Of a stretch of 64,000 nt of DNA, positions 10,914 to 64,000 are shown in pieces. The position numbers were made by a program, and so were the translations under genes. The DNA comes from Selaginella moellendorffii (lineage: Eukaryota > Plantae > Lycopodiophyta): assembly GCF_000143415.4 (NCBI RefSeq), contig NW_003314305.1:88391-152390 (forward strand), given 5' to 3'. The stretch's first letter is position 1, and each line of letters opens with the position of its first letter. The notes beneath the pieces were generated by a model. That model was given only the letters and a program-made list of their open reading frames with translations, searched no databases and was not told the origin of the DNA.

Positions 10914-10999
10914 AAAGTCATGGTACAAGCCTTTTTTGAAGATTCGTGAGAATCAAGGTGATCTCGTGAATCTTCAAAAAAGGATTGTGCCATGACTTT
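10914..10999 (+). repeat. ~42-bp-stem inverted repeat (pre-miRNA-like hairpin)
   Basis: AAAGTCATGGTACAAGCCTTTTTTGAAGATTCGTGAGAATCA-AGG-TGATCTCGTGAATCTTCAAAAAAGGATTGTGCCATGACTTT; on + RNA it pairs with 3 G:U, 1 mismatch and 1 bulge. Confidence 0.85.
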
Positions 11000-13764: not shown

Positions 13765-13889
13765 AGAACATCTTCTTGGGCATATTCCTAGAATTTAGGG
13801 CTGTCGATTCCTATATCCTTTTAGGGCTGATGATGAGAGAATGCTGCGAGGAGGTGGAGGTAAGGCAGGAGGAGGGCTGCATCAGCGAG

Positions 13890-14430: not shown

Positions 14431-14503
14431 AGTGTCGACAGATCCAGGTCGTTAAACTGCGAGAGACCACAAACTTTGGAGAATTTCCCAGAGAGAGCAA
14501 AGC

Positions 14504-15124
14504 AAGATTTCTTACCTGTGGACATCCCGGCTACGTGGGAAGCCATGGAAGAATGCTTTCGAAAGGGGCTGGCCAAGGCAATCGGTGTGAGTAACTTTAG
14601 CACGAAAAAGCTGCACGACTTGCTTCAACATGCAAAGATCACTCCTGCAGTGGATCAGGTAACACCATGATCTTCAAGAAAACTTCTACCAAGTTGTGTT
14701 GTCACTCTTCAAGGTTGAATTACATGAGAGACTTGTGCAAGAGAAATTGTGTCCAAGTGATTGCTTGGTCACCTCTAGGTGGTCTTGGCAAGCCTTGGGG
14801 AAGCAAATCCGTTATAGAGCATCCTGTTATCCAGGAAATCGCTCTAAAGCACCACAAATCTCCTGCTCAGGTACATGGTTTTCTTGATTCCCGTTAAGTT
14901 TCATTCATCCATGCGTACAGGTGATCATACGATGGCTCACGGAAATCGATGTAGCTCCCGCTGTCAAGACCTACAACTCCCAGAGACTTCTGGAAAACAT
15001 TAACAGCTTCGATTTCAGCTTGGCAGACGGGGACCATAAACGAATCGAGACCATCGCACAGGAAAGGCTTGGTATGTGGGATGCTTTGTGCAATTTCACT
15101 ACCAGTCCTTACAAGTCACTTTGA
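14504..15124 (+). pseudogene. 5'-truncated aldo-keto reductase copy
   Basis: Starts mid-exon at the duplication junction; lacks the PLWQQEQ segment and the ELWDGEI end through small deletions. Confidence 0.9.
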
Positions 15125-15200
15125 ATGCCATCATAAGCTATATAACTCTGTCATCTTTCTATTTGAAGATTCTTCAAATGAAGAGTTACTTGGATGATGA

Positions 15201-16689
15201 TCATGATCTTATGCGGTGCACAAAATTGATGATGGACGCGATGGTTCCAGCCATGCCCACCGCAGTTCCCACAGCCAAGATGGCATAGTTGACTCCGGCC
15301 TCCCACTTTGGCATCACGTTTCTGTATATTCTCAAGTAAAATAACGAAGGAAGGGTCACCGCTACGAGCATGCCTGAGGCAGAGCCTATAAATGCCACCA
15401 TGGTTTCGAAGTATGGAAAAACCATAGCCAACAAAAAAACGAAGATCAGGAGACCGGTCCTGAGAAGCAGGGTGGATGCCACAAAAGATCTCGAAGTATT
15501 GGGCCACGGGAATTTGCTCTCAATATCGAGAGCTATGGGAGCAAGGCATAACGAATACTTGCTGAATGGAAGGAGAACAACCATCCATAGCACAAGCTTG
15601 GCAGCAACCAAGTGTGTGGGAATATTTAGAGATACTTGCGGAAGTGTATAGTCCCCAAACATGGTTCCTCCTAGAAACGCGAATCCAATGTATACCATCG
15701 TGGAGATCATAAAACTGAGAACCAACACCTAGAAGTCCAGTACGAAGTTTAGTTTTACATCTGCATGTCAGTCGATAAAAATGGTACCTTTGCATAGTTG
15801 GAGGGATTCTTGAGCGACGTATAAACACTAGGAAGAGCACAGTGAGCCGCAAAACAGTAGGCATAGATTCCCGCGATGTTGAGCAAGTTTTCCGGTCTCA
15901 AGTGTGGAACGGAGTGGTGAAACCCGATGCCCAATCCAGCTCCGGCATAAATCATTGTAACCGTGATGATCATGTACGTAACAATACCGAATAGAGATAG
16001 ATATGATATCCATGCCAAGTTTCTTAGCCAGACTGTTGGAAGAACAACGAGGAACGCTATGAAAAGCAGCACCTTGGAAGGGCCAAGCTCAAGAGCTGAG
16101 ATCCGAAGGGTGGCATGAGGGAATAGCCTGGCAAGATTGTCACCCATGGAAATCGTGTAGCCCACCAACACTGCTATCATCTCGAATTGAACCAGCAAGG
16201 TGAAGGGGAGGCGAGCTCTGGAACCGAAGGCAGCCTCGGCAATTGTGTTGTACGATCCATTTGGGGTGAGGCAGCGACCAAGAACATAGGCAGTATAGCA
16301 ACATATCACTGAAAACGCGAACAGGATGCTCAAACCCAGCCAGCCACCTTGCTCGAGAGCGTAGGGTGTGGTGAGGAAAGAAATCCCTGCAAAAAGAATC
16401 AAGGCAGCTTGCTTGAAGCATTTCAAATAAGAATATCGATTTATCACTCACCAAGTATGGCACTGACACTGTTGAATGTTGCATGTAGGAATGAGCTCCT
16501 TTGTAGCTTGTTTTGTGCTTGATCATTTTGATCGAGGCTCTGCCCCACCTCAAGAGCTCGGTGCTCCATATCCCACTCAGACGCAGGCCCTAAGTCAAAA
16601 GTCATCATACGAGAAGATTCTACAATAGGTTTGCAGCTTGCGAAAGCTCTCCTCCATGAATTTATCTGGAGCTCCATTGAAGTCATCAT
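15201..16689 (-). CDS. AVT1-like amino acid transporter, copy 2
   Basis: Same motifs as copy 1 with open exons; start codon uncertain (16689 or further upstream). Confidence 0.85.
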
Positions 16690-17000
16690 CGAGACTCGAG
16701 AGGCCCTACTCATTGGAAGCATCATCGCTTCATGCGTTTTGACCGCCCACGATGTCACAAGACCCTGGTCTCGCTGAAAACGTGTCCAACCCCACTTAAT
16801 TTTCTTGACAGATGGACCACTGTTGTGTATTTATGAGATTTTGGTCAATATACAACCAAAAACGACGCGCCTCCTGGCGTCCTAGCTGGCACTGGTGTCT
16901 GTCCGTACATCGTACGGCTTGGCACCGTAACAACCACGTCAGCCTTTCGTCCTAGATGCGTTTGGATGGAACAGTGAAGAAGATAACTTTCCATTCTCCC

Positions 17001-18655
17001 ATGTCCGCAACAAATTCATGGGATCAAGCCGCTCTTCGTCTCTTGTGGCTCCACATTCGATGCCTGGCTCAACATTGTTGCTGCAAAGATTTCTCACTGA
17101 TTTCTCGAGAAAGATGTGCCTCACTAGTATCATACAAACATGTGTAGCTGGCTTCGCGGCTCCTCACTTTTCCACAATCCACTGCTCAATTGGGGCTGCC
17201 TTCGGCCATTGTTTTCCAGCTGCTTCTATCGGCGATGGGATTGTGGGCTCAATCCGCGATAAATGTTCTCTACTTGAGACACAAGCGGATGGTGAATCCA
17301 GAGACAACAGCGAATCAACCCTGGCACACGACTCAGGTACAATCAAAGAGTTTTAGAATCGACCGCTTAAGAGCACCGCAGCTTCACGAAGTTATTGGAG
17401 GGCTTCTGGGATCTAAATGGAAGATTGTTTCCCTCGTGTTCAACATTGTCACACTCTTCTATGTTTCGTCGGCTCAACTTATAGCATGTAGAGAGTTGTT
17501 TTTGACATTCCTTTCGTCACTCTCGGTCATATCTCAGACTTCCTTTGTGAATTGCGGGCAGTGTGGCATACACCGTGAATGACAACTTGGACAAGAGAAG
17601 CTGGACGTTTGTGTTTGGGGCAATCTTCTCACTGCCAATTTTTTTCCCGAGCGCTCACAACTAAAGAGTTTGGTCGTTCCTGGGAGTGGTCACTATTATC
17701 TTTGACTCTGCTTACATGACAATAGCAACGCTGATTGACAGAAAGGCAAGACTATACTTTTCAATCATTACTAAAACATTCCCACAGGCCGGAAACGTCC
17801 GTCATTCGTCACCACGAAGCTCCCAGGAATATTTTACCGGTTTGGTCGGGATGCTAACGTTCCCATCCCTGTGTAAGATCATGTCACACTAGTAAAGTTT
17901 CATCCTTGATAATGTGTTTTCACTGCAAGGGAGATCATGGATGCAATGTGGAAGCCTGACGAGTACCAAGCAGCAAATCTCTACGGCATGGCTTGCATTT
18001 TGGTGGTGGTCATGCTTCCAAGCATCAGCATGGAACGCAAATTTGGAGACAAGCTTCTCGCCACCCCAAACGCGATGTTGCTACTCCCAAGATCAAAGTT
18101 TCACGACAGTGCCAACGTCCTCATCCTCCTTCATGTGGTTAGTATACCATGGATCCATATGAGCTCTAAGTTCTACATCTTCTCTGATCGATTGAGAGAA
18201 ACCCAATTCATCAGGTTATTAACTTTGGCATGTACTCCCTCGCACTCTACGCGACGTGGGAGAAGATAGTGCGCATCCACGACTCACCAAGCTACGTGAA
18301 GCGAACGTTGTCCCGGATACCAGTGTTCCTGGCGCTGTGGATCACTGCTCTCGCCTTCCCTTTCTTCAGTGCAATCAACAAGCTCTTGGACGCCATCCTT
18401 GTGTCCTGGAACTTCTTCATCATCCCGTGCGCGGCTTACATTGCAGTCTTTTGGTTGCCACAGCCGCGGCGAGGCTCCAAATCCCTGTCGAGGCTGGGCT
18501 GGGCGGTGGATTTGAGCGTTTGCCTGGGCACTATCCTGTGGATGCTGGTCATGCAATGTGGGCTGGGCTTGTGGGGCAACGTCCACACTTTCGTCAAGGT
18601 GTTGGAGGGAACCAGGCCCTTTCCAAAGTGCTATCGCTGCGCACCTCCAAAGTAG
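17001..18655 (+). pseudogene. AUX1/LAX-like copy 2, disabled
   Basis: 8-bp deletion removing HGG in exon 1, lost splice donor near 17490, TAC>TAA at 17662-17664, deletion near 17855. Confidence 0.88.
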
Positions 18656-18679
18656 AGAACAATTCTCCTTCTTCGCCAG

Positions 18680-19229
18680 GCTGAGGAGGGCGAGTGTTAG
18701 TACCACCGCCAGCAATGCTGCATCCAAAGAGGGAGGAGAGGAGCGAAAGCTCGCTCGATCTCCAAAGCTTGTGGGGAAGCTCCCCGGGCCGTTTGATCTC
18801 TCCGGGCGCAAGCGAAAGATCGACAACAAGAGGAAGATGCTCATGAGCCGAGCTTTCAAGGACTATACCGGGTTTGAGTACGAGGGAAGCGGCCTGGACG
18901 AGCACACTAGAAAGGAGATGGCGAGGAAGAAGAAGAAGCTGGGACGCGATAAGGTGAGTGTGTGGCATTCGATTCCTTCTCTTTTGGATCCTCACAAGTT
19001 CTTTTGGCAGCTCCACTAGATCTCTTGAACGAATCTATCAATGCTGGGAGCGTTTGTAGCGATGGAAAGAACACAAGAAGGCTCCAACGAATCTATCAGT
19101 GCTCGAAGCTTTTATAGCAATGGAAAGAAGACAAGAAAGTTACAAGTGCTTATAGAGCAAACAAGACAAGCATTGGAGGAGAAAACTATGTACAAGGTAC
19201 TTGTAGTGTTTACGTATGTATGTAGGTAG
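18680..19229 (+). pseudogene. relic related to the C-terminus of the orphan gene at 21049-21830 (unit 2 copy)
   Basis: KRKIDNKRKMLMSRAFKDYTGFEYEGSGLDEHTRKEMARKKKKLG; no clear start. Confidence 0.5.
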
Positions 19230-19316
19230 TGTCGACAGATCCAGGTAGTTAAACTGCGAGAGACCACAAACTTTGGAGAAATTACCAGAGAGAGCAGAGG
19301 AAGATTTTCTTACCTC

Positions 19317-25500: not shown

Positions 25501-27714
25501 ATGCGCGCGTTCTTCCTGGCGGGCGGGCGCTGGATCGATGCGGCGGTGAGAATCTCCAGCTCCAGCGCGGGCGCTAGGCGGCATTTCGCCGACCGAGGCT
25601 ACCTGAGGAAGGATTACAGCGATCGCAACTACAGGAAGAAGGGGTTTGTGGATCCCGGGAATTTCTCCTACACGGTGCCGCAGGACTCGAGGAAGGTGTG
25701 GAAGCCGCCTCAGTTCGCGGGGGAGCGCTACGAGCATCGTAGCCACGATCGCGAATCCAGGTACTCTTCTTGGAGTGCCAAGGATGACGACGAAGAGAGT
25801 AACTATCCATTCACGGGTAGTAAGCTCGACAAGTATCCCAGCAGCTCCAAGGCCTACGCTGGCTTCGATTCTAGCGAATCGCAGCTGGTGCCGGCAGCAA
25901 ACTCGTCCACTCCTCCAAAGAAGAAGGACGAGGAATCGGAAGACGAAGACAGCGAGCTCGTTGTTCGTGATCGTTTCCAGATAAGAAAGACGCTGTCCGA
26001 CGATGCCGACTCGTCGCTGCAAACGTTCCACAGACCCGACTGCCGACTCTTCGAGATCTCTGGCAACATGGACGAGGACTGGCAGCCGGCGCCCTCCGAC
26101 GAGTGCCTGGTTTTCGAGATGAGAAGCCTGTTCAAGCAAGGGAACGTGGCTACCTGGGAAGCCGAGGACGTTGTTCGCAGCTTTGGTGGTCAGCTTCGGC
26201 CTTTCCACGTCTTTGAGGTGCTCAAGTCGTGCACTCCAAGCGAAGCTGGAATCGCCCTCGCGTTTTTCCGCTGGGCCGGGCTCCAGCCTTTCTTCCAGCA
26301 CGTAAGCGCGACCTACAACATGATGCTCAAGCTCCTCCAAGAAGCCGGCAAGTATCTTGACATGGCCCGGCTTGCCAAAGAGATGGAGAACGACGACATT
26401 CCCAGGACTGTCGAGACTTCCAAGATACTCCTCGTCAGCCTGTTCAAAGGGGGCTACGTTGAGGACGCGCTGGAGGTGTTTTCACAGATGGAGAGGTCCT
26501 CGTCACCTCCGGGTTTCAACGAGTACAAGTATGTGATTGACAGGATGCTACGATCCGAGTGCTACTTGGTGGTGCCGGTGCTGTACAAGGGCCTCATGAC
26601 TGCTGGACACGCTCCAGATTCTTACGTGTACAACGCGGTGATTAGCAGCTTGTGCAACGTCGCAAACATGGACGAGGCCATGAAGGTCTTCTCCAAGATG
26701 AAGGACAAGTCCACCATCGACCTATTCACTTACACCATCCTCATCGACGGCTACATCAAGTGCCACAACGTCACCGGTGCTACCAGGCTCTTTTTGGAGA
26801 TGCTAGAACGAGGATGCTTGCCGGGCGAGGAGATTTTCAATCTCTTGTTCGGACTCCACGCAAAGGCCGGAGAGCTGGACGAAGCCGTGAACTTGTTCCG
26901 GAAGATCGCGGAAAACGGTTGCCAACCGACAGTGAAGTCGTATGGAATGCTGCTGGATACTTTTGCCATGGTGAACAATCTCGAGGGAGCTCACGCGTTT
27001 TACATGGAGCTCATCGGCAAGAACATCTACCCGAGCTCGGTTTCGTGCAACTCTCTCCTCAGCCGGCTGAGCAAAGCTGGGAAAACGACGCTGGCTCTCA
27101 CATTCTTCCGGGAGATGAAGTCGTTCCCGGGAACCAAACCGAATGGGATAACTTACAACATTGCGATCGACCTCTTCGGCAAGACTGCGAAGTTTGCAGA
27201 GGCTTGGGAGGAATTCCTCGACATGAAGCGAAACGGCTGCAGTCCTTCGGTTGTCACTTACAACACTTTGATCGTCAGGCTGGGGCGAGGAGGATACATC
27301 GAGCTGTGCTTCGACCTGTACGAGGAGATGAGGGGTCGCGGGATCACTGCCAACCAGTTCACGTACTGCGGCCTGATCGACGTGCTCACCAGGTACAACC
27401 AAGTGGAGCACGCTCTCGAGTTCCTGGACGAGATGAAGCGCCTCCACTTCCATCCCAGCTTCAATACGCTCCAGCTCGTCATCAAGAGCCTGTGGAAGAC
27501 TGGCGACTTGGCTGCCGCAAAGCAGCTGTGCCAGGACTATCCCGGCGTCTACACTCCGCAGCTGGAGAGCTCTCGAGCACCACCATCGGACACCTCCACG
27601 GCAGTGGCGACTCACAGTGGTGGCTGGCAGCGGAGTGACTACAACAACACCTTCTCGTCACAGATGGAGCTGGATCCCGCAATGCAACTGGATCGATACA
27701 TGGAGCAGTGGTGA
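25501..27714 (+). CDS. P-class PPR protein with long N-terminal extension, probably mitochondrial
   Basis: ALAFFRWAGLQPFFQH..TYN, then ~35-aa P repeats (YNAVISSLC, TYTILIDGY, TYNTLIVRL). Confidence 0.92.
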   Translation: MRAFFLAGGRWIDAAVRISSSSAGARRHFADRGYLRKDYSDRNYRKKGFVDPGNFSYTVPQDSRKVWKPPQFAGERYEHRSHDRESRYSSWSAKDDDEESNYPFTGSKLDKYPSSSKAYAGFDSSESQLVPAANSSTPPKKKDEESEDEDSELVVRDRFQIRKTLSDDADSSLQTFHRPDCRLFEISGNMDEDWQPAPSDECLVFEMRSLFKQGNVATWEAEDVVRSFGGQLRPFHVFEVLKSCTPSEAGIALAFFRWAGLQPFFQHVSATYNMMLKLLQEAGKYLDMARLAKEMENDDIPRTVETSKILLVSLFKGGYVEDALEVFSQMERSSSPPGFNEYKYVIDRMLRSECYLVVPVLYKGLMTAGHAPDSYVYNAVISSLCNVANMDEAMKVFSKMKDKSTIDLFTYTILIDGYIKCHNVTGATRLFLEMLERGCLPGEEIFNLLFGLHAKAGELDEAVNLFRKIAENGCQPTVKSYGMLLDTFAMVNNLEGAHAFYMELIGKNIYPSSVSCNSLLSRLSKAGKTTLALTFFREMKSFPGTKPNGITYNIAIDLFGKTAKFAEAWEEFLDMKRNGCSPSVVTYNTLIVRLGRGGYIELCFDLYEEMRGRGITANQFTYCGLIDVLTRYNQVEHALEFLDEMKRLHFHPSFNTLQLVIKSLWKTGDLAAAKQLCQDYPGVYTPQLESSRAPPSDTSTAVATHSGGWQRSDYNNTFSSQMELDPAMQLDRYMEQW

Positions 27715-40353: not shown

Positions 40354-42348
40354 ATGTCCACCGCGATCTCGGTGGAGCAGCAAGATGTGTATGCGTCGCG
40401 GCTCAAGCGATGCGGCGAGACCAGAGATCTCGTCGAGGGCCGCCGGATCCACGCCCATGTTATCGACAACGGCCACTTCTCGGACCGCTACGTCTCCAAT
40501 CTGGTGGTGGACATGTACGGAAAATGCGGCAGCGTGGAGGAGGCACGCCGCGCCTTTGATTCCATCGCGGCGCCGAATCTCTTCTCTTGGAACATCCTCA
40601 TTGCCGCATATGCCCAGAACGGGCATTTGGGCGAAGCGCGGCGGCTCTTTGATTTCATGCCCGAGAAGAACGCCGTGTCCTGGAATGCAATGATCACTGC
40701 GTATGCGCGGAATGGTCAAGCTAGCGACGCCAAAGTGATCTTCGACGCTATGCCAAGACCCACTGCTGTCTCTTGGAATGCCATGATCGCAGCATATGCC
40801 AAGAACGGGCATCTGGAGGATGCTCGGACATTGTTTGAGGCGATGCCATGCCCGAACCTTGTGACTTGGAACACAATGCTCGCCGCTTACTGTGAAGCCG
40901 GGGATATGGATCAAGCTCACGTAATGTTCAAGAGCATGCCCACGCCGGACGTAGTTTCGTGGACTACCATTCTCTCCGCATATGCCTCGAGGGGTGATCT
41001 TGGTGAGACAAAGGCCGTGTTTGCAAGTATGCCGCGGAAGAACGTTGTTTCGTGGACAGCGATGCTGAAAGCATACATACAAGCTGGTGAGATTGATAAT
41101 GCGAGACTACATTTCGAGATAATGCCCGATAGAAACATCGTGTCGTGGAATGCAATGGTTGCAGCATATGCCCAACATGGAAACTTGAGAGAAGCGAGAG
41201 CACTGTTTGATAGCATGGCGAAAAAGGATTCCGCGACCTGGACGACGATGGTGGTCGCGTACGCGAGCGCAGGCCAGCTGAAAGAGGCAATGGATCTCTT
41301 CAATCAGATGCAACAGCGAGATGTAGTATCTTGGACTGCAATGCTCACGGCCTATGCCCAAGACGGACAGCTGAACAAAGGGAGGGAATTGTTCGATAGT
41401 ATGCCTCACAGGAACGTCGTGTCGTGGAACGCGATGATCGCCGGCTACGCTCAAAACGGGAACCTGACAGAAGCAAGGGTCCTGTTCGATCGAATGCCGG
41501 TAAAGAGTACCGCTTCGTGGAACGCTGTGGTAACCGCGTATGCCCAGGCCGGAGACATGGAGGAAGCCCGAGCTCTGTTCGAGAGAATGCCTTCCAGGAA
41601 CACTGTGTCGTGGAACACGGTCATCACTGGCTACTCGCAGCAAGAACAGCAAGAGAAAGAGGCGGTGAGGCTGTTCCTCAGGATGGACCTGGAAGGCGCT
41701 CGTCCCGACGAGATAACTTTCGCGTGCGTGATCGACGCGTGCGCGAGCTCCTCGTCGCTACGAGAGGGCCGGCATTTGCACGAGGAGGTGTCGAGCAGCA
41801 GCGATGTGGCGAGAGACCCCGTGGTGTGGAACTCGCTCATCAACATGTATGGATCTTGCGGGAGCCTGGGAGAAGCTCAAGCGCTCTTCGACGCCATGGC
41901 CAACAAGAACGTCGTGTCGTGGAACGCAATGCTTGCGGCGTACGCGGGCGCCGGGGACGAGCTCCAGGCGCTGGAGCTGTTCGGGAAGATGGATCACGAA
42001 GGCTTCCGTCCCGACGCAGTGACTTTCATCGTCGTTCTCGCAGCTTGCAGCCACGGTGGGATCTTCCAAACAGGACTTTTGCTCTTCGTCTCCATCGCGG
42101 GGGACTACTTCGCGACTCCAACCGCGGATCACTTCCTGTGCGTGATCGATCTGCTGGGACGAGCCGGGCTGGTGGACGAGGCGGAGGAGGTGGTGAAAAC
42201 GATGCCATTCGAGCCATGCGTGGTTGCGTGGGTGTCGCTCCTCAGCGCTTGCAAAGTCCATAACGATGTGGAGCGCGCGAGAAAGGTAGCGAGCATTGCC
42301 GTGGAAAGCGAGCACGCTGGTCTTCTTGTTCTTCTGGCCAACATGTAA
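40354..42348 (+). CDS. PLS-class PPR protein (E-type, no DYW)
   Basis: GRRIHAHV, DMYGKCGS, many short SWNAM repeats, ACSHGG, DLLGRAG, MPFEP..W.SLLSACKVH. Confidence 0.93.
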   Translation: MSTAISVEQQDVYASRLKRCGETRDLVEGRRIHAHVIDNGHFSDRYVSNLVVDMYGKCGSVEEARRAFDSIAAPNLFSWNILIAAYAQNGHLGEARRLFDFMPEKNAVSWNAMITAYARNGQASDAKVIFDAMPRPTAVSWNAMIAAYAKNGHLEDARTLFEAMPCPNLVTWNTMLAAYCEAGDMDQAHVMFKSMPTPDVVSWTTILSAYASRGDLGETKAVFASMPRKNVVSWTAMLKAYIQAGEIDNARLHFEIMPDRNIVSWNAMVAAYAQHGNLREARALFDSMAKKDSATWTTMVVAYASAGQLKEAMDLFNQMQQRDVVSWTAMLTAYAQDGQLNKGRELFDSMPHRNVVSWNAMIAGYAQNGNLTEARVLFDRMPVKSTASWNAVVTAYAQAGDMEEARALFERMPSRNTVSWNTVITGYSQQEQQEKEAVRLFLRMDLEGARPDEITFACVIDACASSSSLREGRHLHEEVSSSSDVARDPVVWNSLINMYGSCGSLGEAQALFDAMANKNVVSWNAMLAAYAGAGDELQALELFGKMDHEGFRPDAVTFIVVLAACSHGGIFQTGLLLFVSIAGDYFATPTADHFLCVIDLLGRAGLVDEAEEVVKTMPFEPCVVAWVSLLSACKVHNDVERARKVASIAVESEHAGLLVLLANM

Positions 42349-43960: not shown

Positions 43961-45973
43961 ATGGCAACGCCGCCATGGAAAGTCCGGCTACACCGTGATC
44001 TCAAGGATCTGGCCAAGGAGCCATTGAAGGGCATTGACGTTGTTGTGGACGAGCAAGACATGCAGCGGATGTGCTTGGTTTTGTCACCTCTTTGCGGCCC
44101 TTATCAGGGCTTGAAGCTCCACCTGGATGTCAAGATACCGGCAATGTATCCAACGGATCCCCCAAAGGTAACCATCCAGACACCGGTGCCTCACCCAAAC
44201 GTCATGGGGTCTAGGATCTGCTGCGATATTCTCGATCACCAGTTTTTCGGGGGTTATACTCCAGGCTACTTGCTCGGCTATGTCTTTCTTCAGCTCTTGA
44301 GCCTCTTCTCAAGCGACAATATTGAGCAGTCACATGGTGGCGGCAACGTGAATCTACAGTCTTACTCGAAGATGTGTTTAGGTCCCCGAGGCTTGAAACC
44401 GCGTGTAGAACGTTACCAGTGTCCAAAGTGTGGATTCAATGTGAGTTTCTCGGCAGTGGATACGGCAGTTATCAAGTGCAAGGAGATAGAAAAGAAGGAG
44501 GAGGACACAAACTTGTTTGGGGTTTTGGGGTTAGATGTTGATGGTGATGAGGATGTTTTGCCGTTGGAGGCTTTGGCGCGGCCAAAACGAAAGCAGCATG
44601 GAAAGCCAGCGTTAAAAAATGTCGTAGATATGATGTGTGAGAGGTTGAACGTTGATTGCCGCCTGGAGATCATTGACAAGCTCGATGACCGGGAGATTAT
44701 GTCCGTAAAAGCGTTTGACAAGAGTGTGGAGATATACACTCGACTTCTTGAAAGGCGGCTCAAGTGCTTCTTCTTGCGGAAAACTTTCAGAGAGAAAGAC
44801 GTCGTCTTGGGCATTGGAGTCAACCTCGACAGCTTGAACAAGTTAAAGCCGACAGTTGTGTCGCTGGACGTGCTCTCTCACGAGTCTTTCAGCGTTTATT
44901 CTCACAACAAGAGCCTTCTCGGAGTGAGCTTCCAGTATTTCCTTCCGCTCGCCTTAGATGATGAGCACTTCAAGCGTGCTAAGGGTTTAATGCAGAGCTC
45001 GCTTATGAACCTGGTGCATGTCAAAACATGGAGCCCTCAAGTCGTGCTTGAAACTCTTCCAGTGATGATGAACTTGATGGTGCTCAGGCTTGTGCAGTCT
45101 TGTGATCGGCACAAGGCAGCTTTCTTGAAGAGTAGTGGATTCAGCCACCAGCTTATGAAGGCATCAGAGTTTGCCCTGGAGGGATATTGCCTTCTCTATC
45201 ACTTGTTTTCTAAGCTGGTGAGGGACGACCAAGAGTTGGCAAACCTTATACAACACAAAGTTCAAGATTTCATTGACAACATAGAACTCCGGGGAAAGAA
45301 TGCAGTCCCAGACCTTGGGGAGTTCCTCACTTACTTGCTAGTTACTAAGGATGTTGAATGGCAACCCAAAGACAAAGAAAAGCCACAGGTCTCCAAGATG
45401 TTTCTGGGCGAATCCCTTACCAGAAGGGTGCTATGGTGCCTGAAAGACTTCCCACATCTGGCGTACATTGAGCCGGAGAACTATCCCTCTGAGCTGCGAA
45501 TCAGGCAAACATTCCAAGCTTGCAAGACATCCATGAGACTGATCCTGTTCCAGGTCAACTTTTTCAAGATGACAAGGTCAACGGAGGAGTTTGACCAGAG
45601 ATATGGGTTTCCATCCGAAGCCATGACCAAGAAGCTGATGCAATTGATGAAAGAGGTGTACAAGGCAAGGGATTGGGACGTTTACTTTAGGATTTTTGGG
45701 CTCGAATTTGACAGCGGCTGGAAGTGGCAATTGGTGAGATTGCTCAAGAAATCTATTGAATCCAGTGAGAAACGAGGGTACCACGTCCTAAGGTATACCC
45801 AAAGTGAGCTCTATGAGTTAAGAAAAGCTGTGGAACCGGCTTGTCCTCCTCCACAAGGATGGGTCGACAACTGTGGCAAATATCCAGTTCCACAAAAGAG
45901 TTTCTTTCCAGGAGATGAAACTCTCAGGCCACTAAAGAAAGGTAAATCCAAGAACATCCATCCATCTCAATAA
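43961..45973 (+). CDS. ubiquitin-conjugating (E2/UBC) domain plus long uncharacterised C-terminus, intronless
   Basis: RLHRDLKDL, GPYQG, IPAMYPTDPPKV, HPNVMGSRICCDIL (catalytic Cys region), GYTPGY; ~520 further residues. Confidence 0.88.
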   Translation: MATPPWKVRLHRDLKDLAKEPLKGIDVVVDEQDMQRMCLVLSPLCGPYQGLKLHLDVKIPAMYPTDPPKVTIQTPVPHPNVMGSRICCDILDHQFFGGYTPGYLLGYVFLQLLSLFSSDNIEQSHGGGNVNLQSYSKMCLGPRGLKPRVERYQCPKCGFNVSFSAVDTAVIKCKEIEKKEEDTNLFGVLGLDVDGDEDVLPLEALARPKRKQHGKPALKNVVDMMCERLNVDCRLEIIDKLDDREIMSVKAFDKSVEIYTRLLERRLKCFFLRKTFREKDVVLGIGVNLDSLNKLKPTVVSLDVLSHESFSVYSHNKSLLGVSFQYFLPLALDDEHFKRAKGLMQSSLMNLVHVKTWSPQVVLETLPVMMNLMVLRLVQSCDRHKAAFLKSSGFSHQLMKASEFALEGYCLLYHLFSKLVRDDQELANLIQHKVQDFIDNIELRGKNAVPDLGEFLTYLLVTKDVEWQPKDKEKPQVSKMFLGESLTRRVLWCLKDFPHLAYIEPENYPSELRIRQTFQACKTSMRLILFQVNFFKMTRSTEEFDQRYGFPSEAMTKKLMQLMKEVYKARDWDVYFRIFGLEFDSGWKWQLVRLLKKSIESSEKRGYHVLRYTQSELYELRKAVEPACPPPQGWVDNCGKYPVPQKSFFPGDETLRPLKKGKSKNIHPSQ

Positions 45974-46186: not shown

Positions 46187-46660
46187 TATTGAGCAGTCTC
46201 GCGCACTCTGCTTTAAGAGACGTATGGGAATCATGGAAGTCAGAAAAATGTAGGTTGAACGTTAATTGGCGCCTGGAGATCAATGATAAGGGAGATTATG
46301 TCCGTGAAAGCATTTGACAAGAGTGTGGAGCGGTATACACTCGACGATCAAGTGCTTCTTCTTGCGGAAAATTTTCAGAGAGAAGGACGTTAACGTTTTG
46401 AGCATTGGAGTCTCGAGATCTCGAACAAAGTTAAAGGTGCTATGTGTCGCCGAACTTGCGCGTTTATTCTCACAATAAGGAGGTATACTAATCCTTCTGC
46501 TCGCCTTTGATGTTGAGCATTCCAGATATCATGAAATTCCAGGTCAACTTTTTCATGAGAGATATGCCCATGTACAAGGCAAGGGATTAGGATGTTTAAG
46601 CTCTTGTGGAACCGGCTTGTCCTCCTCCAAAAGGATGGGTTGACACCAGTGGCAAAACTT
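46187..46660 (+). pseudogene. deleted ghost copy of the UBC gene
   Basis: Ordered blocks matching 44643-44802, ~44950, ~45550, ~45660 and 45829-45880. Confidence 0.88.
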
Positions 46661-46901: not shown

Positions 46902-48111
46902 ATGTGGCGGTCAGGTAAGAAGCTTTACGGTTGAGAGGCATCCCAAAACGATCGCATTTTCTAGAACAGCTGCGGCTCGTCAGTTTTTCCAGAGGAGCTT
47001 GTGCAGTGGCCATGGATCATTAACAACTACTCAACCTGCACCGCGACTTGTCTTGCACTATGACAAGATCAACACATCCCTCATTCTTTTTGACAGTTCC
47101 TATTACAGCATCGGCAGCCATGGTTGGTTGATGAAAGAATTTGGGGCCCTGCTTGCGTTGGCTCACCGAGGTACCAAATGCACCATTCACCAGCGCAAGC
47201 ATTGCAATGGCTCCTACTGGAGCTGCCCGTATAGCCGCCCTGACTTAGACTACGACCCGGACATGCCACCGTCCGTGACTGAGCTCATGCCGTGCCAGAT
47301 TGAGAGCATCGAGGCCACCGGCTGCCTTTCTACTTTCGAGCTTGGTATCAGATACAAGATGGACTCGGTGGTGATCAGCGATGAAGATCGAGAGATAGAT
47401 CGTGCAAAATTATCCAAGGAATATAAGGAGTTTATGCACGCGTGGCGTAACAAGGAGATAGATTGCGCAAGATCATCTGAGGAATGTTTGGACATCTGGC
47501 ATAACAGGGTTCCTACAAATTGTGTGCTACTCTCGGTTCCTTCAAAGGCACTCAAGTACAAGGCATTGCAATGGAACCTTGAGCGCGATGTTTGCAACAA
47601 CTTCCCGCTGGAGATTTTGCCACACGAGTTTGTGACAAATGCAGCCAGCTCCAATACGAGGCTCAAGGAAAAAGATGCCATACTTGAGTTGGGTGAGGCG
47701 GTGCTGCAGGGGATCAGGAGATGTGTTGTAGTGGATCTCCGGGGCATTGGGATCATGAAAAAGGTGGGGTTGTTTCTACCTGGTGCTACTGTGGATAAGC
47801 TGCGAGGATATGCTGGGTCGTTAGAGACGGTGATCGCTGTGAGTACTAAGGAGCAAGCCCCGGGCCTGGCTGGGGAATTCCTCAACAAAGATGACTGGGA
47901 GGCGCTTGGGGTTGGTGACATCAACATAAACACAGTGGCATGCTTCATAAACGACTTGGTCTGGACCATGGAAATAGTGCTACTGTTCGCGAACGACTTC
48001 GAGAAATCAGCCGTAAGTATTGCTGCCTCTCTTCGTAGGCTTCCTGAGCCATCATCATATAGGTATTTGGATGAATGCGTTTCTTCTCAGGCGCCGTGTG
48101 ATGCATTCTAA
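46902..48111 (+). CDS. orphan protein, paralog A, presequence-like N-terminus
   Basis: ATGTGGCGGTCAG|gt..aacag| gives MWRSAAARQFFQRSLCSG joined to the 370-aa ORF; motif HGWxMxEFGALL..RKHCNGxYWSCPYSR shared with 56436-57660. Confidence 0.75.
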
Positions 48112-54089: not shown

Positions 54090-55025
54090 TTGCCCTAGCT
54101 ATGGGTTTTTGTATAAACCCTAAATTTCGCATCGAAAGAGCAGGGCCTGCCTGATTCCCACGGCGTATTTCGCCGCCACCATGGCGCGCCCCAGTGCCAT
54201 GCAGGCGCCGTGGATGGAGCCGATACCACGGCTTTCCTCACACTCCTGGCCGCGTTCCTTCCCAAGCTTCCCGCCTCCGTGCTGCGATCCACGAGTGGAA
54301 AGGCTCTGGTTGTTTTCCTGTCGTGCATCGAGTGTATCCTTTGCACCGCCGATCGATCGAGCTGGCCGGCTCTGGCTGGATCGTTCCAGTTGCTTCTCAA
54401 GTTTTGCGTGGATATGAGACCAAAGGTACGCTCGCTTCGTTTTCTTTTCTTTCTCCGGAGCTTGATCTTTGGGCTCTTCTTCCATCCTTTTGCAATTATC
54501 CTGTGGACACCAAAGACAAGGTGATTGCAAAGCTTCTTGAGGAGTCAATGAGAAAGTATCCGACCTTGAGAAGTAATCTCTTCTAGCATCCAGGTGAAGC
54601 TTCTTACTTCCTGTGCACTACGCTTGACGTGTTTTTATCCTCAGACATTGATAAAGCAAAACAAAATCTATCTGCGACGCTAATGGCGGCATGGACGTGG
54701 ATTTGGATGCAAAGGAAAAAGCATGTTATTCCAAGGACATTGCCTCGGCAAACTGGTCAGCCATTTCTGCGTTTTCGGATAAGTTTCTTCCTCTTCTTTT
54801 CAATATATTTTGTGATCACCACCAGAAAAACGGGGAGAGTTACAGGTACTAGGATGCATCTTCTTTGTCTTTCTAGTAGTAACAATTCTCAACAAAGTGA
54901 GTTGCTAGGCTGCTATTGGTGCTTTTGCGTCCATATCAAGCAACTGTTCAGGAGTTTTTCCGAACGGTCATAGAGAAGCTTTTGAAAGCCACGAAACATA
55001 CATATGCGAAAGAGACAAGGTAATC
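54090..55025 (+). pseudogene. deleted ghost copy of RRP12 5' half, introns retained
   Basis: Matches 57710-58285 and then jumps to 59605-60168; includes intron sequences. Confidence 0.92.
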
Positions 55026-55026
55026 G

Positions 55027-55545
55027 CCATATCCAGTTCCAGCCAGGTAGTGCTGAGCTTGATCCAGTCTGAGCGAACGAGCTCGAAGTTTGGCTTGGCG
55101 TGCTTGATCCAGTCGAAGTGGACGATGGCGTTGGAGTAAACGATCCAGACAACAACGATGCTAGTGTGGATTCTCCAGAAGCTGGTGTTGATAGTGATGA
55201 TTCGGTTAAAGCTGGCGAAGTTGACGATGATACTACCAGCATCGGCTCGCCAGCTGACGAACTCCTAGATCCTACTGAAGCTGCCGCTTCAACACTAGAG
55301 CCGGAAACTGACGGTCCCGCATTAGATCCAGAACTCTCTGCTGCGATTACCAGCGTCAACAACATTAGAAACCAAACCATACTCAAAGACTTTATACCTG
55401 AGTCAAAACTTGGAGCCGCTCCAGGGGCTGCCGCCGGCGAGCTAGTTGCAGCAGTGCTCCCGCTCCCACCTACAATACAGGCTTTGCAACTGCGAAAAGC
55501 GCGCTCAAGCCTTTATGAAAATATTAAACCACAGATGATCTCAGT
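55027..55545 (-). pseudogene. inverted mosaic: RRP12 fragment (55463-55545) fused to Ser/Thr-rich exon pieces
   Basis: 55463-55545 is the reverse complement of RRP12 ~60180-60316 with a gap; the adjacent S/T-rich frame contains a GT..AG intron. Confidence 0.55.
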
Positions 55546-56435
55546 ATTTAGGGTGGAGAGTGAGTTCTTGTGGCTTTGTCGCTCCATCAGCTGCACCACC
55601 AAGCTCTCAAACGCCACTAAATCCTTCTCCATCCCCATCGCCATCGCCAGCAAATCCTTACGCGTCTTCCTCTTCTCCTCCCCCGTCGTCGCAATCTCCA
55701 GCAACCAGGAGCTTCATCCAGAGGAGGAGGAGCTGCTGCTCGAAACAGGATCCACAAGGGACCGATGCCCGAGTTTAAGCTTTCAGACGGCACGAACAAG
55801 TGGACGTCGGTGTACGAGATGAGCCGACTTACAAGACCGGGCTTCAGGAAGTGGAGCTTGATCGACAACTCGTGTTTCTTCTTTGAATAGTCATTACTAT
55901 TGTGTTATCTTTGAAGTACGAGATCACGAGTGCTAGCACACATTGGCACTCAGCCAGTTTTTTGTCCAATTTGGTTTGCTAGGAGCATATATTGAAGAGT
56001 TTTACCTCCATAAAGGTTTGAATAGACAATAGATTAGTTTTGGTTTTAAGCCAGATGCTCGTAGATCGAGTTCCACTTGCAAGAGCCGTCCGGAAGAACA
56101 CAGCTGCCAGGATCCGGGGCCTTGTACGTTCTCTTTGGCGGCGTGGAGAAATCCTCATTCGGGAAGTCCGCATCTAAATTACAGGAAAATCGTTCTCCAT
56201 AATGCGTCAAACTGTGTCACTAAGAATGAAGAATGATACATAGGACTCTATGGTGATGTGTTATGTCCGTCCTCCAACAACGAGCCCATGATCACATTTT
56301 TACCTCTGTCACTAGATGGTTTCCAGAAATAATTGCCATGGCGAACTCGGTTGCTCAGTTGATGGCTCCGAACGGGGAGGGAAGAGGCCTGTTCCTACCC
56401 CCTGCCCAAACGCAAGAAGTTTAGATACAACGATT

Positions 56436-57660
56436 CTAGAGGGTACTTACGATTGATTTGTCAAGTTTGAATTCCAGTAACAGCTCCACAGTCCACTCCA
56501 AATCGATGGTGAAGCAGACTACTTCCTCTCTGGCAACATTCTCAACCCCGAGCTCCTTCCAGTCGTCTTCTTTGAGGAATTCCCCAACTGGGACAGGCTC
56601 TTTGCCGATATACTCGAGCATCTTGTCGAGCATCTTGTCCACCGTCGCACCAGGAAAAAACAAACCAACTTTCCTCATTATTCCAATCCCTCGGAGATCC
56701 ACAATAACACACCTGGAAAAAAACAAACCAGCTTTCCTCATAATGCCAATCCCTTCAATAACATACCTCTTTATCCCCTGTAAAACGGCCTCCGCCAGCT
56801 CGAGCATCGCCTTGTCCTTAACCTTCGTGCTCGAATTTGATATAAACTCGTCAGGAAGTAATTCGAGGGGGAAGCTAGTGACGTCGGTCTTGAGTATCCA
56901 CTTAAGCGCCTTGTACTTGACAGCTAACGTAGGAACGGATACAAGCACGCATCCTGTTGCAGCCCTGTCGTACTTAATCTCCAAGTGTTCCTCGATTATT
57001 CTCTCACGATCTGTTTCCACGCTTGTGTCCCAAATGCATGCCCCGCCATCCCAGTTGTTGTATCTAAGCCCGAGCTCCAAAGTCGAGAGGACGCCGGTAA
57101 TCTCAATGCTTCTAATCTGGCATTGCTCGAGCTCTCTTATGGAGGGAGCCATGTCTGGGTCATAATCTATGTCGCGCCTGCTATAGGGGCAGCTCCAGTA
57201 AGTGCCATTGCAGTGCTTGCGAGTCTGATTAGTACACTCCGTCTGGGAGTGTCCAGATTCAAGCAAGGCCCCAAATTCTCTCATCGACCAACCATGGCCA
57301 CCGCCATTGTACCAACAGTCACCGAAGAGAAGGAGTGAAGTGTTGGCTCTGTTGTAACGCAAAACAAGTTGCGGTGCCGGCCGAGTATCGCATGATGATT
57401 CATGACCACCTGTTCCAAAGGAAATAAAGAAAACCTGAAATCGTTTCCATCAACTTTCTTACCTGGCCGCGGTGCGGATGATGATCGAAGGCCCGTACAG
57501 AAGCTCCTCAAGAAAAATCGGCAAGCCACCACTGCTCCACAAGAGAAATCTATCATCACCTCTCTCAACCTTTAAAATACTTACCTGGCTGCCATGAAGA
57601 TGAGCGATGGCGCCTTAACTGGCGCCTTGCCGCTGGTGAAGTAGAAGAATGTAGGATCAT
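56436..57660 (-). CDS. orphan protein, paralog B of 46902-48111
   Basis: HGWSMREFGALL, RKHCNGTYWSCPYSR, DYDPDM, CQI.SIE.TG.LST.ELG.RY, LELAEAVLQGI, GEFLKEDDW; short 5' exons predicted from ATG at 57660. Confidence 0.75.
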
Positions 57661-57772: not shown

Positions 57773-60700
57773 ATGGCGATGCATGAGGAGGAGGAGGATG
57801 TGGGGCGCGCGCTGCTCAATCGCTTCCACAATTCTCCGGCGCCCGAGCACAAGCAGCTACTGGCGGTGGTAAGCGCGGTGATGGAGGTGCTGAAAGAGCA
57901 GGGCCTGCCGCTGATTCCCACGGCGTATTTCGCCGCGACCATGGCGCCGCTGGAGCAGCAATGCAATGCAGGCGCCGTGGATGGAGCCGATACCACGGCT
58001 TTCCTCACATTCCTGGCCACGCTCCTTCCCAAGCTTCCCGCCTCCGTGCTGCGATCGACGAGTGGAAAGGCTCTGGTTGTTTTGGACAAGGTGCTGGGCG
58101 ACGCAAAACTTCCGGCTGCCACTGCCAAGCCCGCGCTGTCGTGCATCGAGTGCATCCTTTGCGCCGCCGATCGATCGAGCTGGCCGGCTCTGGCCGGATC
58201 GTTCCAGTTGCTTCTCAAGTTTTGCGTGGATATGAGACCAAAGGTACGCTCGCTTCGTTTTCTTTTCTTTCTCCGGAGCTTGATCGCAGGCTTCTCTAGG
58301 TGCGAAGGCGCGCGCACTTGTGCGCTGCGCAAGTCTTGTCTAGCTTCCATGGCTCGGCGGCTCTCGACAAAGCTAGCGACTTAGTTGCCTCGTCGTTCGA
58401 AGAATGCGCGTCACCTTTCCTGGCCAAAGGCAAGAGCAACGAGGACGCTGCCGCTGGCGCTCTGAAGCTCTTACACATGATCGGGGCCATGCGGCTTCTT
58501 CTGCCAGCCATGTCTCCCAAGACCATTGCGAGAGTGCTTCCCAGCATCACACTTCTCATCACTTTGAAGCAGTCACTCGTCACCAGGAGCGTGCTCAATG
58601 TTCTTCTTTCTCTGGGAAGAAGATCCAGGACGGGCGTTTCATCGGCGGCATTGGTGGGCGTTATTCGTGCTGTTCTCTCCCTCGTCGCGGCTGATAACAG
58701 GGATGTGGACGAGGTCATGACGGCAGTTCATGTGATAGAGCAGGGGCTGTCTAACTTGTACGCCATCGATCCTAAGCTCTGCGCCGGCCAGCTTCCGGCG
58801 CCATTCGATGCCATCACAGGTATAGCTCCTTTTCTTTCTTTTTTCTCTTGGAGCTGAAAGTTTCTTTTACTGTATTCCAGATCTCTTTGCTTCGGAACAG
58901 GAAGAGGTTGTGTTTGGTGCAGCGGAGTGTCTCCGAGGCTTAGCAGATCGCTTCATAGATGGCGCAATGCTGAGACAGCTAGAAACCGATCCAGTTGCTA
59001 TTGAAAGTATCTGTTCGTCCGTTGAAAGGTCCTTGAGCTATGAATATTCCGGCGCCTGGGATAAAGCTTTGCTCGTAGTCTCGGCACTTTTCCAGAAAAT
59101 GGGTAACTTTCTCTCGCTTTTTAAAGCTGTAGCTCATTCGATTTTATTCCTTGTTTTTCCAGGTGAGGCCTCCTTTCGATTCATGAAAGGAATTGTTAAA
59201 GTTCTCGCCGAACTACAAAAACTTAGAGACGAGGACTTGCCTTGTCGAAAGCAGGCAAGTTTTACACGCTAGATTTCACGTTTGATACTCTTTTACAGCT
59301 ACACAATAGTTTTGGAGCAGCCGTTGTGGCTATGGGACCAGAACGTTTTTTGGAGCTCTTGCCATTGGACATGGATGCCACGCAGCTAGACAAAGCCCGC
59401 ATCTGGTTGATACCTATCTTGAAGCAACATCTTGTTGGAGCAAGGCTCAAATACTTCGCGACTACCATCGGTCCTTTGGCAGAAAGTCTTGCAGTCAAAG
59501 CACATGAGGTTGATATATATGTTTTCTTTTAGAATCGTACTAAACAGCGTTCTTTGCAGCTTGCTGGGGCGCCTGCAAAAAATGCAGAAGCATGCGCACA
59601 AGCTCTTTGGGCTCTTCTTCCATCCTTTTGCAATTATCCTGTGGACACCAAAGACAGCTTCCAGGTGATTGCAAAGCTTCTTGGGGAGTCAATGAGAAAG
59701 TATCCGGACCTTAGAGGAGTAATCTCTTCCAGCATCCAGGTGAAGCTTCTTACTTCCTGTGCACTACGCTTGACGTGTTTTTATCCTCAGACATTGATAA
59801 AGCAAAACAAATCTATCTGCGACGCTAATGACGGCATGGACGTGGATTTGGATGCAAAGGAAAAAGCATGTTATTCCAAGGACATTGCCTCGGCAAACTT
59901 GTCAGCCATTTCTGCGTTTTCGGATAAGTTTCTTCCACTTCTTTTCAATATATTTTGCGAGTCACCACCAGAAAAACGGGGAGAGTTACAGGTACTAGGA
60001 TGCATTATCTATTTTCTCTCTTTTTTTTTAACAAGTGAATTGCTAGGCTGCAATTGGTGCTTTTGCGTCTATATCAAGCAAAGCTACTGTTCAGAAGTTT
60101 TTCCGAACGGTCATGGAGAAGCTTTTGGAAGCCACCAAAGATACAAATGCGAAAGAGAGAAGGTAATTCGTTACATAACTACTGAAATCATCTATGGTCT
60201 AAAATTTTGGACAGGTGCATGTTTATGGATCTTGCTTTGTCACTAGTTGGTGGTTTGGATCATAAAGGCTTGAGCGCGCTTTTCGCAGTTGCAAAGCCTG
60301 CATTGCAGGTGGGAGTTTTGGGCACGCAAAACCTTTTATTTCTTCATTATCTAATTATCTCCCTTTAGGATCCAGACTCTGGTGTTCAGAAAAAAGGATA
60401 CAAAGTTCTTGCTGGTATTTTGAAGGTAAATTTTGTTTTCAAGTGCTCAGATTTATGTTTCGAACTTACAGGAACATACTGATTTTCTCTCTTCAAAAGA
60501 GCAAGAAATATTTGAAGCTATTGTGGAAGCTACATCTGCATGCCAGTCCTCTGCAAAACAATACAGGGTTGCTTGCTTGCAGTTGTTGATTCTACATCTC
60601 GTGCAGGTAGATGCATCTTCAATTAGTTTTCGTCGTTGATAATTTTGTTGCCATTTCAGCAGGGGGACGAGAATACGAACGACTACATAGCATTCCTTCT

Positions 60701-62944: not shown

Positions 62945-64000
62945 TCAATGGTTGATGTTACACTGCTGCAGGTATGGGTGATCGTAGCTCACGTACCTCG
63001 TCCAGTACGACTTGTATCTCGAAAGCCCAATGTCCAGCCATGGCTTGAGATTGCCGTTGTAATGCACCACCGCGGCTGCATCCATGTCCGCTTTGTCGAT
63101 GCTTGGATTGTAGCCCAGTCCCAGGACGTGCCACGACTTGTCCAATGGATGCGTCAAGTTGTAGAAGGTGATGAGGCCAGGGGGTAGCGTTCCGAGCTTC
63201 CACAGCAGCCTGTCCTCGTTCTGGAAAGCAAAAGCAAAACCTCTTGTCAAGCACGAGGCAAAAGATAGATATCGATCCTAAAGCCATTACCATGTTCTGC
63301 CACTTGTGGTAGATCCCCGTTATGTCGCGCCGCTTCCACTCTTTGAGATCGAAGACGTTCATCCCGTACGCCCAGCCACACGCGTCCGGGTTGAAGTTCC
63401 TGGCGATGTGCGGGTTGGAGAAGTTCAAGTACTTGTCGAAGCGATGGAAGCTGGCGCCGCAGGTCTCGACAGCACCGTTCACTTTGCCTTGCAGGTCGAT
63501 GCTCCACAGGCCGGTGAGGTCCTTCTGGACAACGATGTCATCGTCCAGGAAGAGTATCTTGTCCAGCTTGGGATAGATTTGCGGCAAGTAGAAGCGCAGG
63601 TGGTTGAGCATGGAGAGGTACTTTGGATTCCTGTACTTGAGATTGGATGACCCCGAGGAAACGGACGTTGGATGATCGGGCTTGAAGTAGTAGTCCTTCA
63701 TGGCAGCGGATTCTAGCTGTCGAAGAACCGGGCAGTAGGATGAGTTGAGCCACTTGAAGTCGTCAATGTTTTGGACTTCAATGGTGGCCTTCCCAGGCGG
63801 ATTGGCGAGAAACCACATGCGCATGGCGCCGTAGTTAAGCCTGTCCGTGACAACGTGAATGACATGCTTATGCGGTTCCTGAAAAGCAGAAAATCGTTAA
63901 GTCGCTATATAGTACTGGAGTCATCGAACCTGTGCATGCCGTACTGTGGAGCTAACTACCACCGATGCCGCAAGAATGTTGTCGGAGAAAAGTGCGTAGT
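62945..64000 (-). CDS. GAUT1: galacturonosyltransferase (GT8), GAUT1-like, 3' part; continues beyond the window
   Basis: YALFSDNILAASVVV, LNSSYCPVLRQLESAAM, KYRNPKYLSMLNHLRFYLP, FLDDDIVVQKDL, LWKLGTLPPGL, HYNGNLKPW. Confidence 0.93.

What the first reader, a model, noticed from the sequence alone, without database searches (positions are those of the whole stretch)
56651..56770. Apparent birth of an intron by tandem duplication of coding DNA
Seen: paralog B has a ~60-bp tandem duplication (GIGIMRKAGLFF / GIGIMRKVGLFF). On the minus strand the first copy runs AG|GTATGT...TTGTTTTTTTCCAG|GT (56766-56713, 54 nt), with a canonical donor, pyrimidine tract and acceptor at the intron size typical of this window. 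Splicing restores GIKR-CVIVDLRGIG, collinear with paralog A (GIRR-CVVVDLRGIG), which has no intron there. Known: intron gain by duplication of an AGGT proto-splice site is a proposed mechanism with few clear cases. The insert is in-frame and stop-free, so retention would be tolerated.
Basis: partly seen in the sequence, partly recalled or inferred. Interest (0 to 1): 0.75.

Follow-up and report, generated by a model that had tools for sequence, protein, structure and literature searches.

The report
Exon duplication that looks like newborn intron
In an orphan gene of the lycophyte Selaginella moellendorffii, a short tandem copy of coding DNA that starts exactly at AGGT has all the signals of a 54-base intron and is removed in the deposited gene model. 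This fits a known route of intron birth, but no transcript data could be reached to show it is really spliced.

Summary
The window is Selaginella moellendorffii. Paralog B is the deposited gene SELMODRAFT_419806 (EFJ18618.1), which maps exactly to the minus strand.

The parental unit is 56714..56653 (62 nt). It starts at AGGT and ends in the Phe-Phe-Pro codons, which supply the pyrimidine tract. The extra copy is 56768..56715 (54 nt = 62 - 9 + 1; 49 of 53 aligned bases identical).

New here: the period is 62, not a multiple of 3. The original duplication would have shifted the frame unless it was spliced or compensated.

Paralog A and every other family member with this region intact show a single copy. 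The family is found only in S. moellendorffii.

Cautions:
- The segment is now in frame and stop-free.
- No consensus branch site was seen on reading the 54 nt by eye.
- JGI models in this family also cut out another in-frame piece that NCBI's model keeps.
- The two B alleles differ at 4.9% of residues.

The mechanism is well known: one review counts 188 inferred cases. This would be a new, unusually clean candidate, not a new principle. The scan's earlier notes hold no similar finding.

The parts
56713..56766 (-). Candidate new intron, 54 nt, GTATGT...CCAG; equals intron 2 of the deposited model SELMODRAFT_419806
   Evidence: Exact mapping of P0002 to the window; sequence read
56715..56768 (-). 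Copy 1 of the duplicated unit (AGGTATG...TTTTTTTCC), 54 nt = 62 - 9 + 1. It has lost the family-invariant Cys codon (now Tyr) and the Val-Asp-Leu codons
   Evidence: Pairwise alignment; family alignments
56653..56714 (-). Copy 2, the parental unit (AGGTGTG...TTTTTTCC), 62 nt. It is collinear with paralog A and encodes the most conserved motif of the family
56761..56768 (-). Donor AG|GTATGT. The A at +3 is derived: copy 2 and paralog A have G there (Cys codon TGT)
56713..56727 (-). Pyrimidine tract and acceptor TTTGTTTTTTTCCAG. The tract comes from the Leu-Phe-Phe-Pro codons of the unit. The AG comes from the first two bases of copy 2, so the duplication junction itself created the acceptor. 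There is one more T than in copy 2
56767..57409 (-). Exon 2 of the deposited model of paralog B
56451..56712 (-). Exon 3 of the deposited model of paralog B. It is followed by a GTAAGT donor that paralog A also has at the homologous place
47719..47780 (+). Homologous single-copy 62 nt in paralog A (AGAT at the start, no insert)
46999..48111 (+). Open frame of paralog A (allele of LOC112341366 / SELMODRAFT_404747)

Best explanation
A 62-nt piece of exon in paralog B was duplicated in tandem after B split from paralog A. The piece begins with the AG|GT of an Arg-Cys codon pair and ends with the T-rich Leu-Phe-Phe-Pro codons. The duplication placed a donor-like AG|GTGTGT at the start of the first copy. 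At the junction it placed a ready-made pyrimidine tract followed by a newly formed CAG|GT acceptor. Because 62 is not a multiple of 3, only removal of one unit by the spliceosome (or a compensating indel) kept the conserved C-terminal part in frame. I infer that the first copy was spliced out from early on. It then drifted as non-coding sequence: G to A at donor +3, one more T in the tract, a net 9-nt loss, and loss of the invariant Cys and Val-Asp-Leu. Today it is a 54-nt intron of the size usual in this genome. Because it is now 3n and stop-free, it is probably facultative, like an exitron. Shown: the duplication, its boundaries, its polarity, the single-copy state in relatives, and the deposited model. 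Inferred: that it is spliced, and the order of events.
For: The unit boundaries need no point mutation at the junction if the unit is AGGTGTG...CC, and the period is 62. The deposited model EFJ18618.1 maps exactly and removes 56766..56713. Splicing restores collinearity with paralog A, with the other-haplotype allele P0004, and with all other family members whose region is intact. Every difference whose direction can be read from paralog A is a change in copy 1, and two of them improve splice signals. The segment is 41% T and 7% C, like intron 1 of the same gene (38% T), and the parental piece was already 40% T. Neighbouring introns are 53, 55 and 56 nt. dN/dS between A and B is 0.18 over 286 codons and 0.14 in the second half of the alignment, which holds the region downstream of the insert, so that frame has been kept under selection. 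In vivo, an engineered AGGT exon duplication is spliced as an intron in vertebrate cells (PMC3265369).
Against: No transcript evidence was reachable. The segment is in frame and stop-free, which has about a one-in-three chance under neutral drift of an intron but is required for a retained insert. The +1 and -9 indels are each what frame maintenance would select. Introns that are 3n and stop-free are reported as counter-selected in eukaryotes (cited in PMC4484396). Reading the 54 nt by eye, I found no YTNAY-type branch site. JGI models in this family remove other in-frame pieces that NCBI's pipeline keeps. Neither B allele has an NCBI Gnomon protein in the clusters searched, and the B alleles differ at 14 of 285 core residues against 5 of 288 for A. 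Both points hint at low expression or relaxed constraint.
Confidence: 0.5

Rival explanations
1. Retained coding insertion. The duplicate is never spliced, and the protein carries an extra degenerate 18-residue partial repeat just before its most conserved motif. The frame was restored by the extra T, either at the time of the duplication or soon after, and the later 9-nt loss was an in-frame deletion.
For: The 54 nt are in frame and stop-free inside a 308-codon open frame. Both indels are of the kind that keeps the frame. The same exon carries a second small in-frame tandem duplication, 12 nt at 56614..56639, which the model keeps as coding, so such inserts are tolerated here. No consensus branch site was seen on reading the segment. 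JGI in-ORF introns are unreliable in this family.
Against: The period of 62 means the primary event broke the frame, which requires a second lucky event. Copy 1 has lost the invariant Cys and Val-Asp-Leu while copy 2 kept everything, so copy 1 is not under the motif's constraint. The donor, tract, acceptor and length are as good as those of neighbouring introns.
Confidence: 0.25
2. Paralog B is unexpressed or decaying. The duplication is then a neutral lesion, and the 'intron' exists only because a gene predictor stepped over it.
For: No NCBI Gnomon protein appears for either B allele in the clusters, while A's allele and another family member have one. The B alleles differ at 4.9% of core residues against 1.7% for A. 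B lies between partial, rearranged copies of the neighbouring RRP12-like gene. Several family members have models that look patched. No paper mentions these loci.
Against: A 308-codon frame is still open through the insert. dN/dS against A is 0.18, and 0.14 in the half of the alignment that includes the region downstream of the insert. The GTAAGT donor of the next intron is conserved with A. The models of both haplotypes keep the same reading frame.
Confidence: 0.2
3. Assembly or sequencing artefact that produced a false tandem copy.
For: None specific.
Against: The two copies differ by four substitutions and two indels, which a collapsed or stuttered read would not give. The deposited model, built on the same assembly, maps exactly.
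Confidence: 0.02

Closest known systems
[quoted passage not shown] 2011, PMC3265369)
   Same: The junctions fall on the duplicated AG|GT. The duplicated exon piece already carried a pyrimidine tract. Removal leaves the protein unchanged. Paralogs lack the intron.
   Different: ATP2A1 is more than 420 million years old and its source is inferred, with splicing re-enacted in cells. Here the parent exon and the copy are still 92% identical side by side, but splicing is untested.
[quoted passage not shown]
   Same: A short-intron genome, duplicated exon units containing AGGT, and an intron that spans the duplicates.
   Different: Those cases have transcript support and several copies of a 24-bp (3n) unit. 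Here there is one extra copy of a 62-nt unit and no transcript data.
Potato RdRp intron gained by tandem duplication across an intron-exon boundary (Ma et al. 2016, PMC4974935)
   Same: A recent, lineage-specific tandem duplication in a plant gene gives a new intron whose source sequence is still visible.
   Different: In potato the splice signals were inherited from an existing intron. Here all signals come from coding sequence.
Exitrons, alternatively spliced internal parts of coding exons (Marquez et al. 2015, PMC4484396)
   Same: The segment is stop-free, its length is a multiple of 3, it is flanked by coding sequence on both sides, it has canonical GT-AG, and both products would be full-length proteins.
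   Different: Exitrons are defined by observed alternative splicing and tend to be GC-rich with weak sites. This segment is T-rich with good sites, and its splicing has not been observed.

Membership tests
Intron gained by tandem duplication of an AGGT exon segment | The intron sequence is a tandem duplicate of the adjacent exon sequence | tested here: met
   49 of 53 aligned bases identical. Score 64 against -31 (sd 9.8) for 9126 adjacent pairs, none as high. BLAST E = 1.4e-7.
Intron gained by tandem duplication of an AGGT exon segment | Both splice junctions fall at the two copies of AGGT | tested here: met
   AG|GTATGT at 56768..56761 and CCAG|GTGTGT at 56716..56707, which are the unit starts.
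Intron gained by tandem duplication of an AGGT exon segment | Removal restores the unaltered ancestral coding sequence | tested here: met
   The spliced product equals P0002 and is collinear with A, P0004 and other family members.
Intron gained by tandem duplication of an AGGT exon segment | The intron is absent at that position in paralogs or outgroups | tested here: met
   DNA of paralog A is continuous, with AGAT at the site. Other members were judged only from protein models.
Intron gained by tandem duplication of an AGGT exon segment | The segment is actually removed from transcripts | not testable with these tools
   No RNA data could be reached. The deposited JGI model removes it, but that is a prediction.
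Exitron | Lies inside a protein-coding exon, has no stop codon and has canonical splice sites | tested here: met
   Open 308-codon frame through the segment; GT-AG with a pyrimidine tract.
Exitron | Both spliced and unspliced mRNAs are observed | not testable with these tools
   No transcript data.
In-frame coding repeat expansion | The duplicated unit is a multiple of 3, so the repeat is coding from the start | tested here: not met
   The unit is 62 nt. Only the present, shortened copy (54 nt) is in frame.

The most novel reading that the evidence does not exclude
This is an intron caught young. It was born from a 62-nt, frame-breaking duplication of an AGGT exon piece, so it had to be spliced from the first generation. 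It has since been improved at donor +3 and in the pyrimidine tract, and it has drifted by chance to a 3n stop-free length. It can now act as a facultative intron (exitron) that gives two protein forms. That would link the tandem-duplication route of intron birth to the origin of exitrons in one locus where parent and offspring sequence are still side by side.
Probability: 0.3. Interest if true: 0.6.

Novelty: new member of a known kind. Interest (0 to 1): 0.4.

Why it matters
Most reported intron gains have no visible source sequence. Here the parent exon piece and its copy lie next to each other at 92% identity. The unit boundaries can be read to the base, and the direction of later changes can be read from a paralog in the same window. 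If transcripts confirm splicing, the locus would be a clean natural example of Rogers' model in a lycophyte with fungus-like short introns. It would also allow a simple minigene test of whether an exon duplicate is spliced at birth, comparing the 62-nt perfect duplicate with today's 54 nt. If transcripts keep the segment, it is only a small coding insertion in a fast-evolving orphan gene.

Tried and rejected
DNA of the allelic scaffold (SELMODRAFT_404745) could therefore not be fetched, and presence of the 54 nt in the other haplotype is unknown.
- Function of the family stayed open. There were no Pfam hits and no PDB sequence hits. The ESM Atlas gave no usable hit. AlphaFold2 on a 14-sequence alignment gave mean pLDDT 34.6, so no fold search was run.
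- The 1.84-billion-protein profile search found relatives only in S. moellendorffii. Two weak bacterial hits (a 2578-aa Sulfurovum protein matched in 11 stretches, and one named a TPR repeat protein) were set aside as not family members, without being aligned.
- A literature search for the locus names found nothing. The Selaginella genome paper is not held in the library.
- Earlier notes of this scan hold nothing similar, by words or by sequence.
- A crude dynamic-programming exon chain over the neighbouring RRP12-like gene gave several 48-65 nt introns, but it is not validated and is used only as colour.
- TRF misses the duplication because of the 9-nt gap.
- I did not build or search a joined spliced sequence of my own. 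The spliced product was handled only as the database protein P0002, and the A/B comparison used the unspliced open frames by reference.

Full report
**Identity of the window and the gene.** A word-based protein search with the open frame of paralog A (46999..48111, +) returned only two clusters, both from Selaginella moellendorffii. The cluster members are:
- XP_024517084.1 / EFJ36594.1, which are A's allele on a 4.46-Mb scaffold;
- EFJ18618.1, SELMODRAFT_419806, on a 1.63-Mb scaffold;
- EFJ36192.1, SELMODRAFT_404745, which is B's allele on the 4.46-Mb scaffold.

EFJ18618.1 (P0002, 405 aa) maps to the window's minus strand without a single mismatch, as five exons: 57556-57463, 57409-56767, 56712-56451, 56394-56304 and 56173-56046. 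The proposed splice has therefore been part of a public gene model since the genome was deposited. No paper in the library mentions these loci.

**The observation.** Read on the minus strand, the sequence is ...AAAG, then copy 1, then copy 2, then TGGTGCG....
- Copy 2 (56714..56653) is 62 nt. It runs AGGTGTG...TTTTTTCC and is collinear codon for codon with paralog A.
- Copy 1 (56768..56715) is 54 nt and runs AGGTATG...TTTTTTTCC.
- 49 of 53 aligned positions are identical. Copy 1 lacks a net 9 nt and has one extra T in the T run.

With these boundaries the junction ...CC|AGGT... needs no point mutation. Shifting the boundaries by one base in either direction would need one. The similarity is far beyond chance. 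BLAST of the window against itself gives E = 1.4e-7. The alignment score of the two adjacent segments (64) is not reached by any of 9126 other adjacent segment pairs in the window (mean -31, sd 9.8).

**What the anatomy adds.**
- The period is 62, not a multiple of 3. A perfect duplicate would have shifted the frame and replaced the conserved C-terminal part, unless one unit was spliced out or an indel compensated.
- All splice signals came from coding sequence. The donor is the AG|GT of the Arg-Cys codons. The pyrimidine tract is the Leu-Phe-Phe-Pro codons. The acceptor AG was formed by the junction itself.
- The parental piece was already unusually T-rich: 40% T against 23% in the rest of exon 2. 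Copy 1 now has 41% T and 7% C, and intron 1 of the same gene has 38% T.
- Wherever paralog A gives the direction of change, copy 1 is the derived one. The changes are TGT to TAT (which turns GTGTGT into GTATGT), the 9-nt loss that removes Val-Asp-Leu, GTT to GCT, and the extra T. Copy 2 kept every residue that is invariant in the family.

Copy 1 is therefore not under the constraint of the motif it came from, and two of its changes improve splice signals.

**Relatives.** A profile search of 1.84 billion representative proteins found further members only in S. moellendorffii. These lie on at least six other scaffolds, and some are neighbours of one another. There is no Pfam or PDB match. Every member in which this region is intact has a single copy of the motif R-[KR]-C-V-[VI]-V-D-L-[RQ]-G-I-G. 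This includes NCBI's model XP_024521175.1. Single copy is therefore the ancestral state, and the duplication is specific to B.

dN/dS between A and B is 0.18 (286 codons, dS about 1.6). It is 0.14 in the second half of the alignment, which holds the part downstream of the insert. Both genes have therefore been protein-coding for most of their history, and the downstream frame has mattered.

A and B also share a GTAAGT donor at the homologous place after the ...KS[IA] codons, which indicates an old shared intron of about 50-56 nt. Together with the 53-nt intron 1 of B and the 55-nt first intron of NCBI's model of A, this supports 54 nt as a normal intron length here. It also agrees with the report that this species' intron length distribution groups with fungi (PMC6157073).

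**Age.** The copies differ by four substitutions and two indels in about 54 nt. If the two assembled haplotypes differ by 1.5-3% at neutral sites (my recollection of the genome paper, not checked here), three or more changes in one lineage since their split would have a probability of 0.008-0.05. The duplication is therefore probably older than the haplotype split and is expected on the other haplotype too. The allele's protein model (P0004) shows no insert. Without its DNA I cannot tell whether the insert is absent or was spliced out by the predictor.

**Reasons for caution.**
- No transcript data could be reached.
- The current length is 3n and stop-free. That has roughly a one-in-three chance for a drifting intron but is a requirement for a retained insert, and +1 and -9 are exactly the indels that frame maintenance would pick.
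- Introns that are 3n and stop-free are reported to be counter-selected (cited in PMC4484396).
- Reading the 54 nt by eye, I saw no YTNAY-type branch site.
- The JGI model is weak evidence. The JGI model of A's allele (P0003) removes an in-frame, stop-free 108 nt (window 47783..47890) that NCBI's model P0001 keeps. Other family models also look patched.
- The clusters hold no NCBI Gnomon protein for either B allele.
- The B alleles differ at 14 of 285 core residues, against 5 of 288 for A. This suggests relaxed constraint or fast evolution.
- B lies between rearranged partial copies of the neighbouring RRP12-like gene.

**Verdict.** The duplication and its AGGT boundaries are certain. I rate the readings as follows:
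- about 0.5: the segment is spliced at least in part, probably as a facultative intron now that it is 3n;
- about 0.25: it is a constitutively retained coding insert;
- about 0.2: B is silent or decaying;
- negligible: an assembly artefact.

The mechanism is established. It was proposed by Rogers in 1989 and re-enacted in cells (PMC3265369). One review counts 188 inferred events (PMC3443670), and there are plant and fission-yeast cases (PMC4974935). This is therefore a new candidate member of a known kind. Its value is its clarity: parent and copy sit side by side, the boundaries can be read to the base, and the period was frame-breaking.

**Procedural notes.**
- I made no joined spliced sequence of my own. 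The spliced product was used only as the database protein P0002, and comparisons of A and B used the unspliced frames by reference.
- Structure prediction failed (pLDDT 34.6) and was not pursued further.

Noticed in passing
window 56614-56639 (minus-strand gene B, exon 3): A perfect 12-nt tandem duplication (2.2 copies) gives Asp-Lys-Met-Leu twice. The other-haplotype allele P0004 has it once. This is a second, very recent, in-frame small duplication 14 nt downstream of copy 2, and the deposited model keeps it as coding.
   Followed up: partly
window 54134-55024 and 55463-55518 versus 57892-60315: Partial, rearranged copies (91-98% identity, one piece inverted) of the 5' part of the RRP12-like gene (Pfam HEAT_RRP12_N at 57773-58381) lie on the other side of gene B. 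B therefore sits inside a local segmental rearrangement.
   Followed up: no
window 47783-47890 (+), paralog A: The JGI model of A's allele (EFJ36594.1) removes an in-frame, stop-free 108 nt starting at CCTG|GTGC. This is the same TGGT that ends the duplicated unit in B. NCBI's model XP_024517084.1 reads through it. It is either another possible exitron or a predictor artefact.
   Followed up: partly
window 8736-14517 versus 14501-19315: A large tandem segmental duplication with a unit of about 5.8 kb at 91-96% identity. A 58-nt tandem repeat sits near its end at 19028-19137.
   Followed up: no
window 46999-48111 and 56046-57556; proteins P0005-P0013, P0016, P0017: Paralogs A and B belong to an orphan protein family found only in S. 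moellendorffii among 1.84 billion representative proteins. It has ten or more loci, some in tandem clusters, and no Pfam, PDB or Atlas match. Its most conserved motif is C-V-V-V-D-L-R-G-I-G.
   Followed up: partly
window 44642-44848 / 45829-45880 versus 46252-46436 / 46605-46656: Short pieces of the gene with a ubiquitin-conjugating (UQ_con) domain at 43961-45970 are repeated just upstream of paralog A, at 78-92% identity.
   Followed up: no
window 4337-6184, 25501-27711, 40354-42345 (+): Three long single-exon PPR-repeat genes. There is also a SET-domain frame at 2300-4285 and a glycosyltransferase family 8 frame at 62961-63824 on the minus strand.
   Followed up: no
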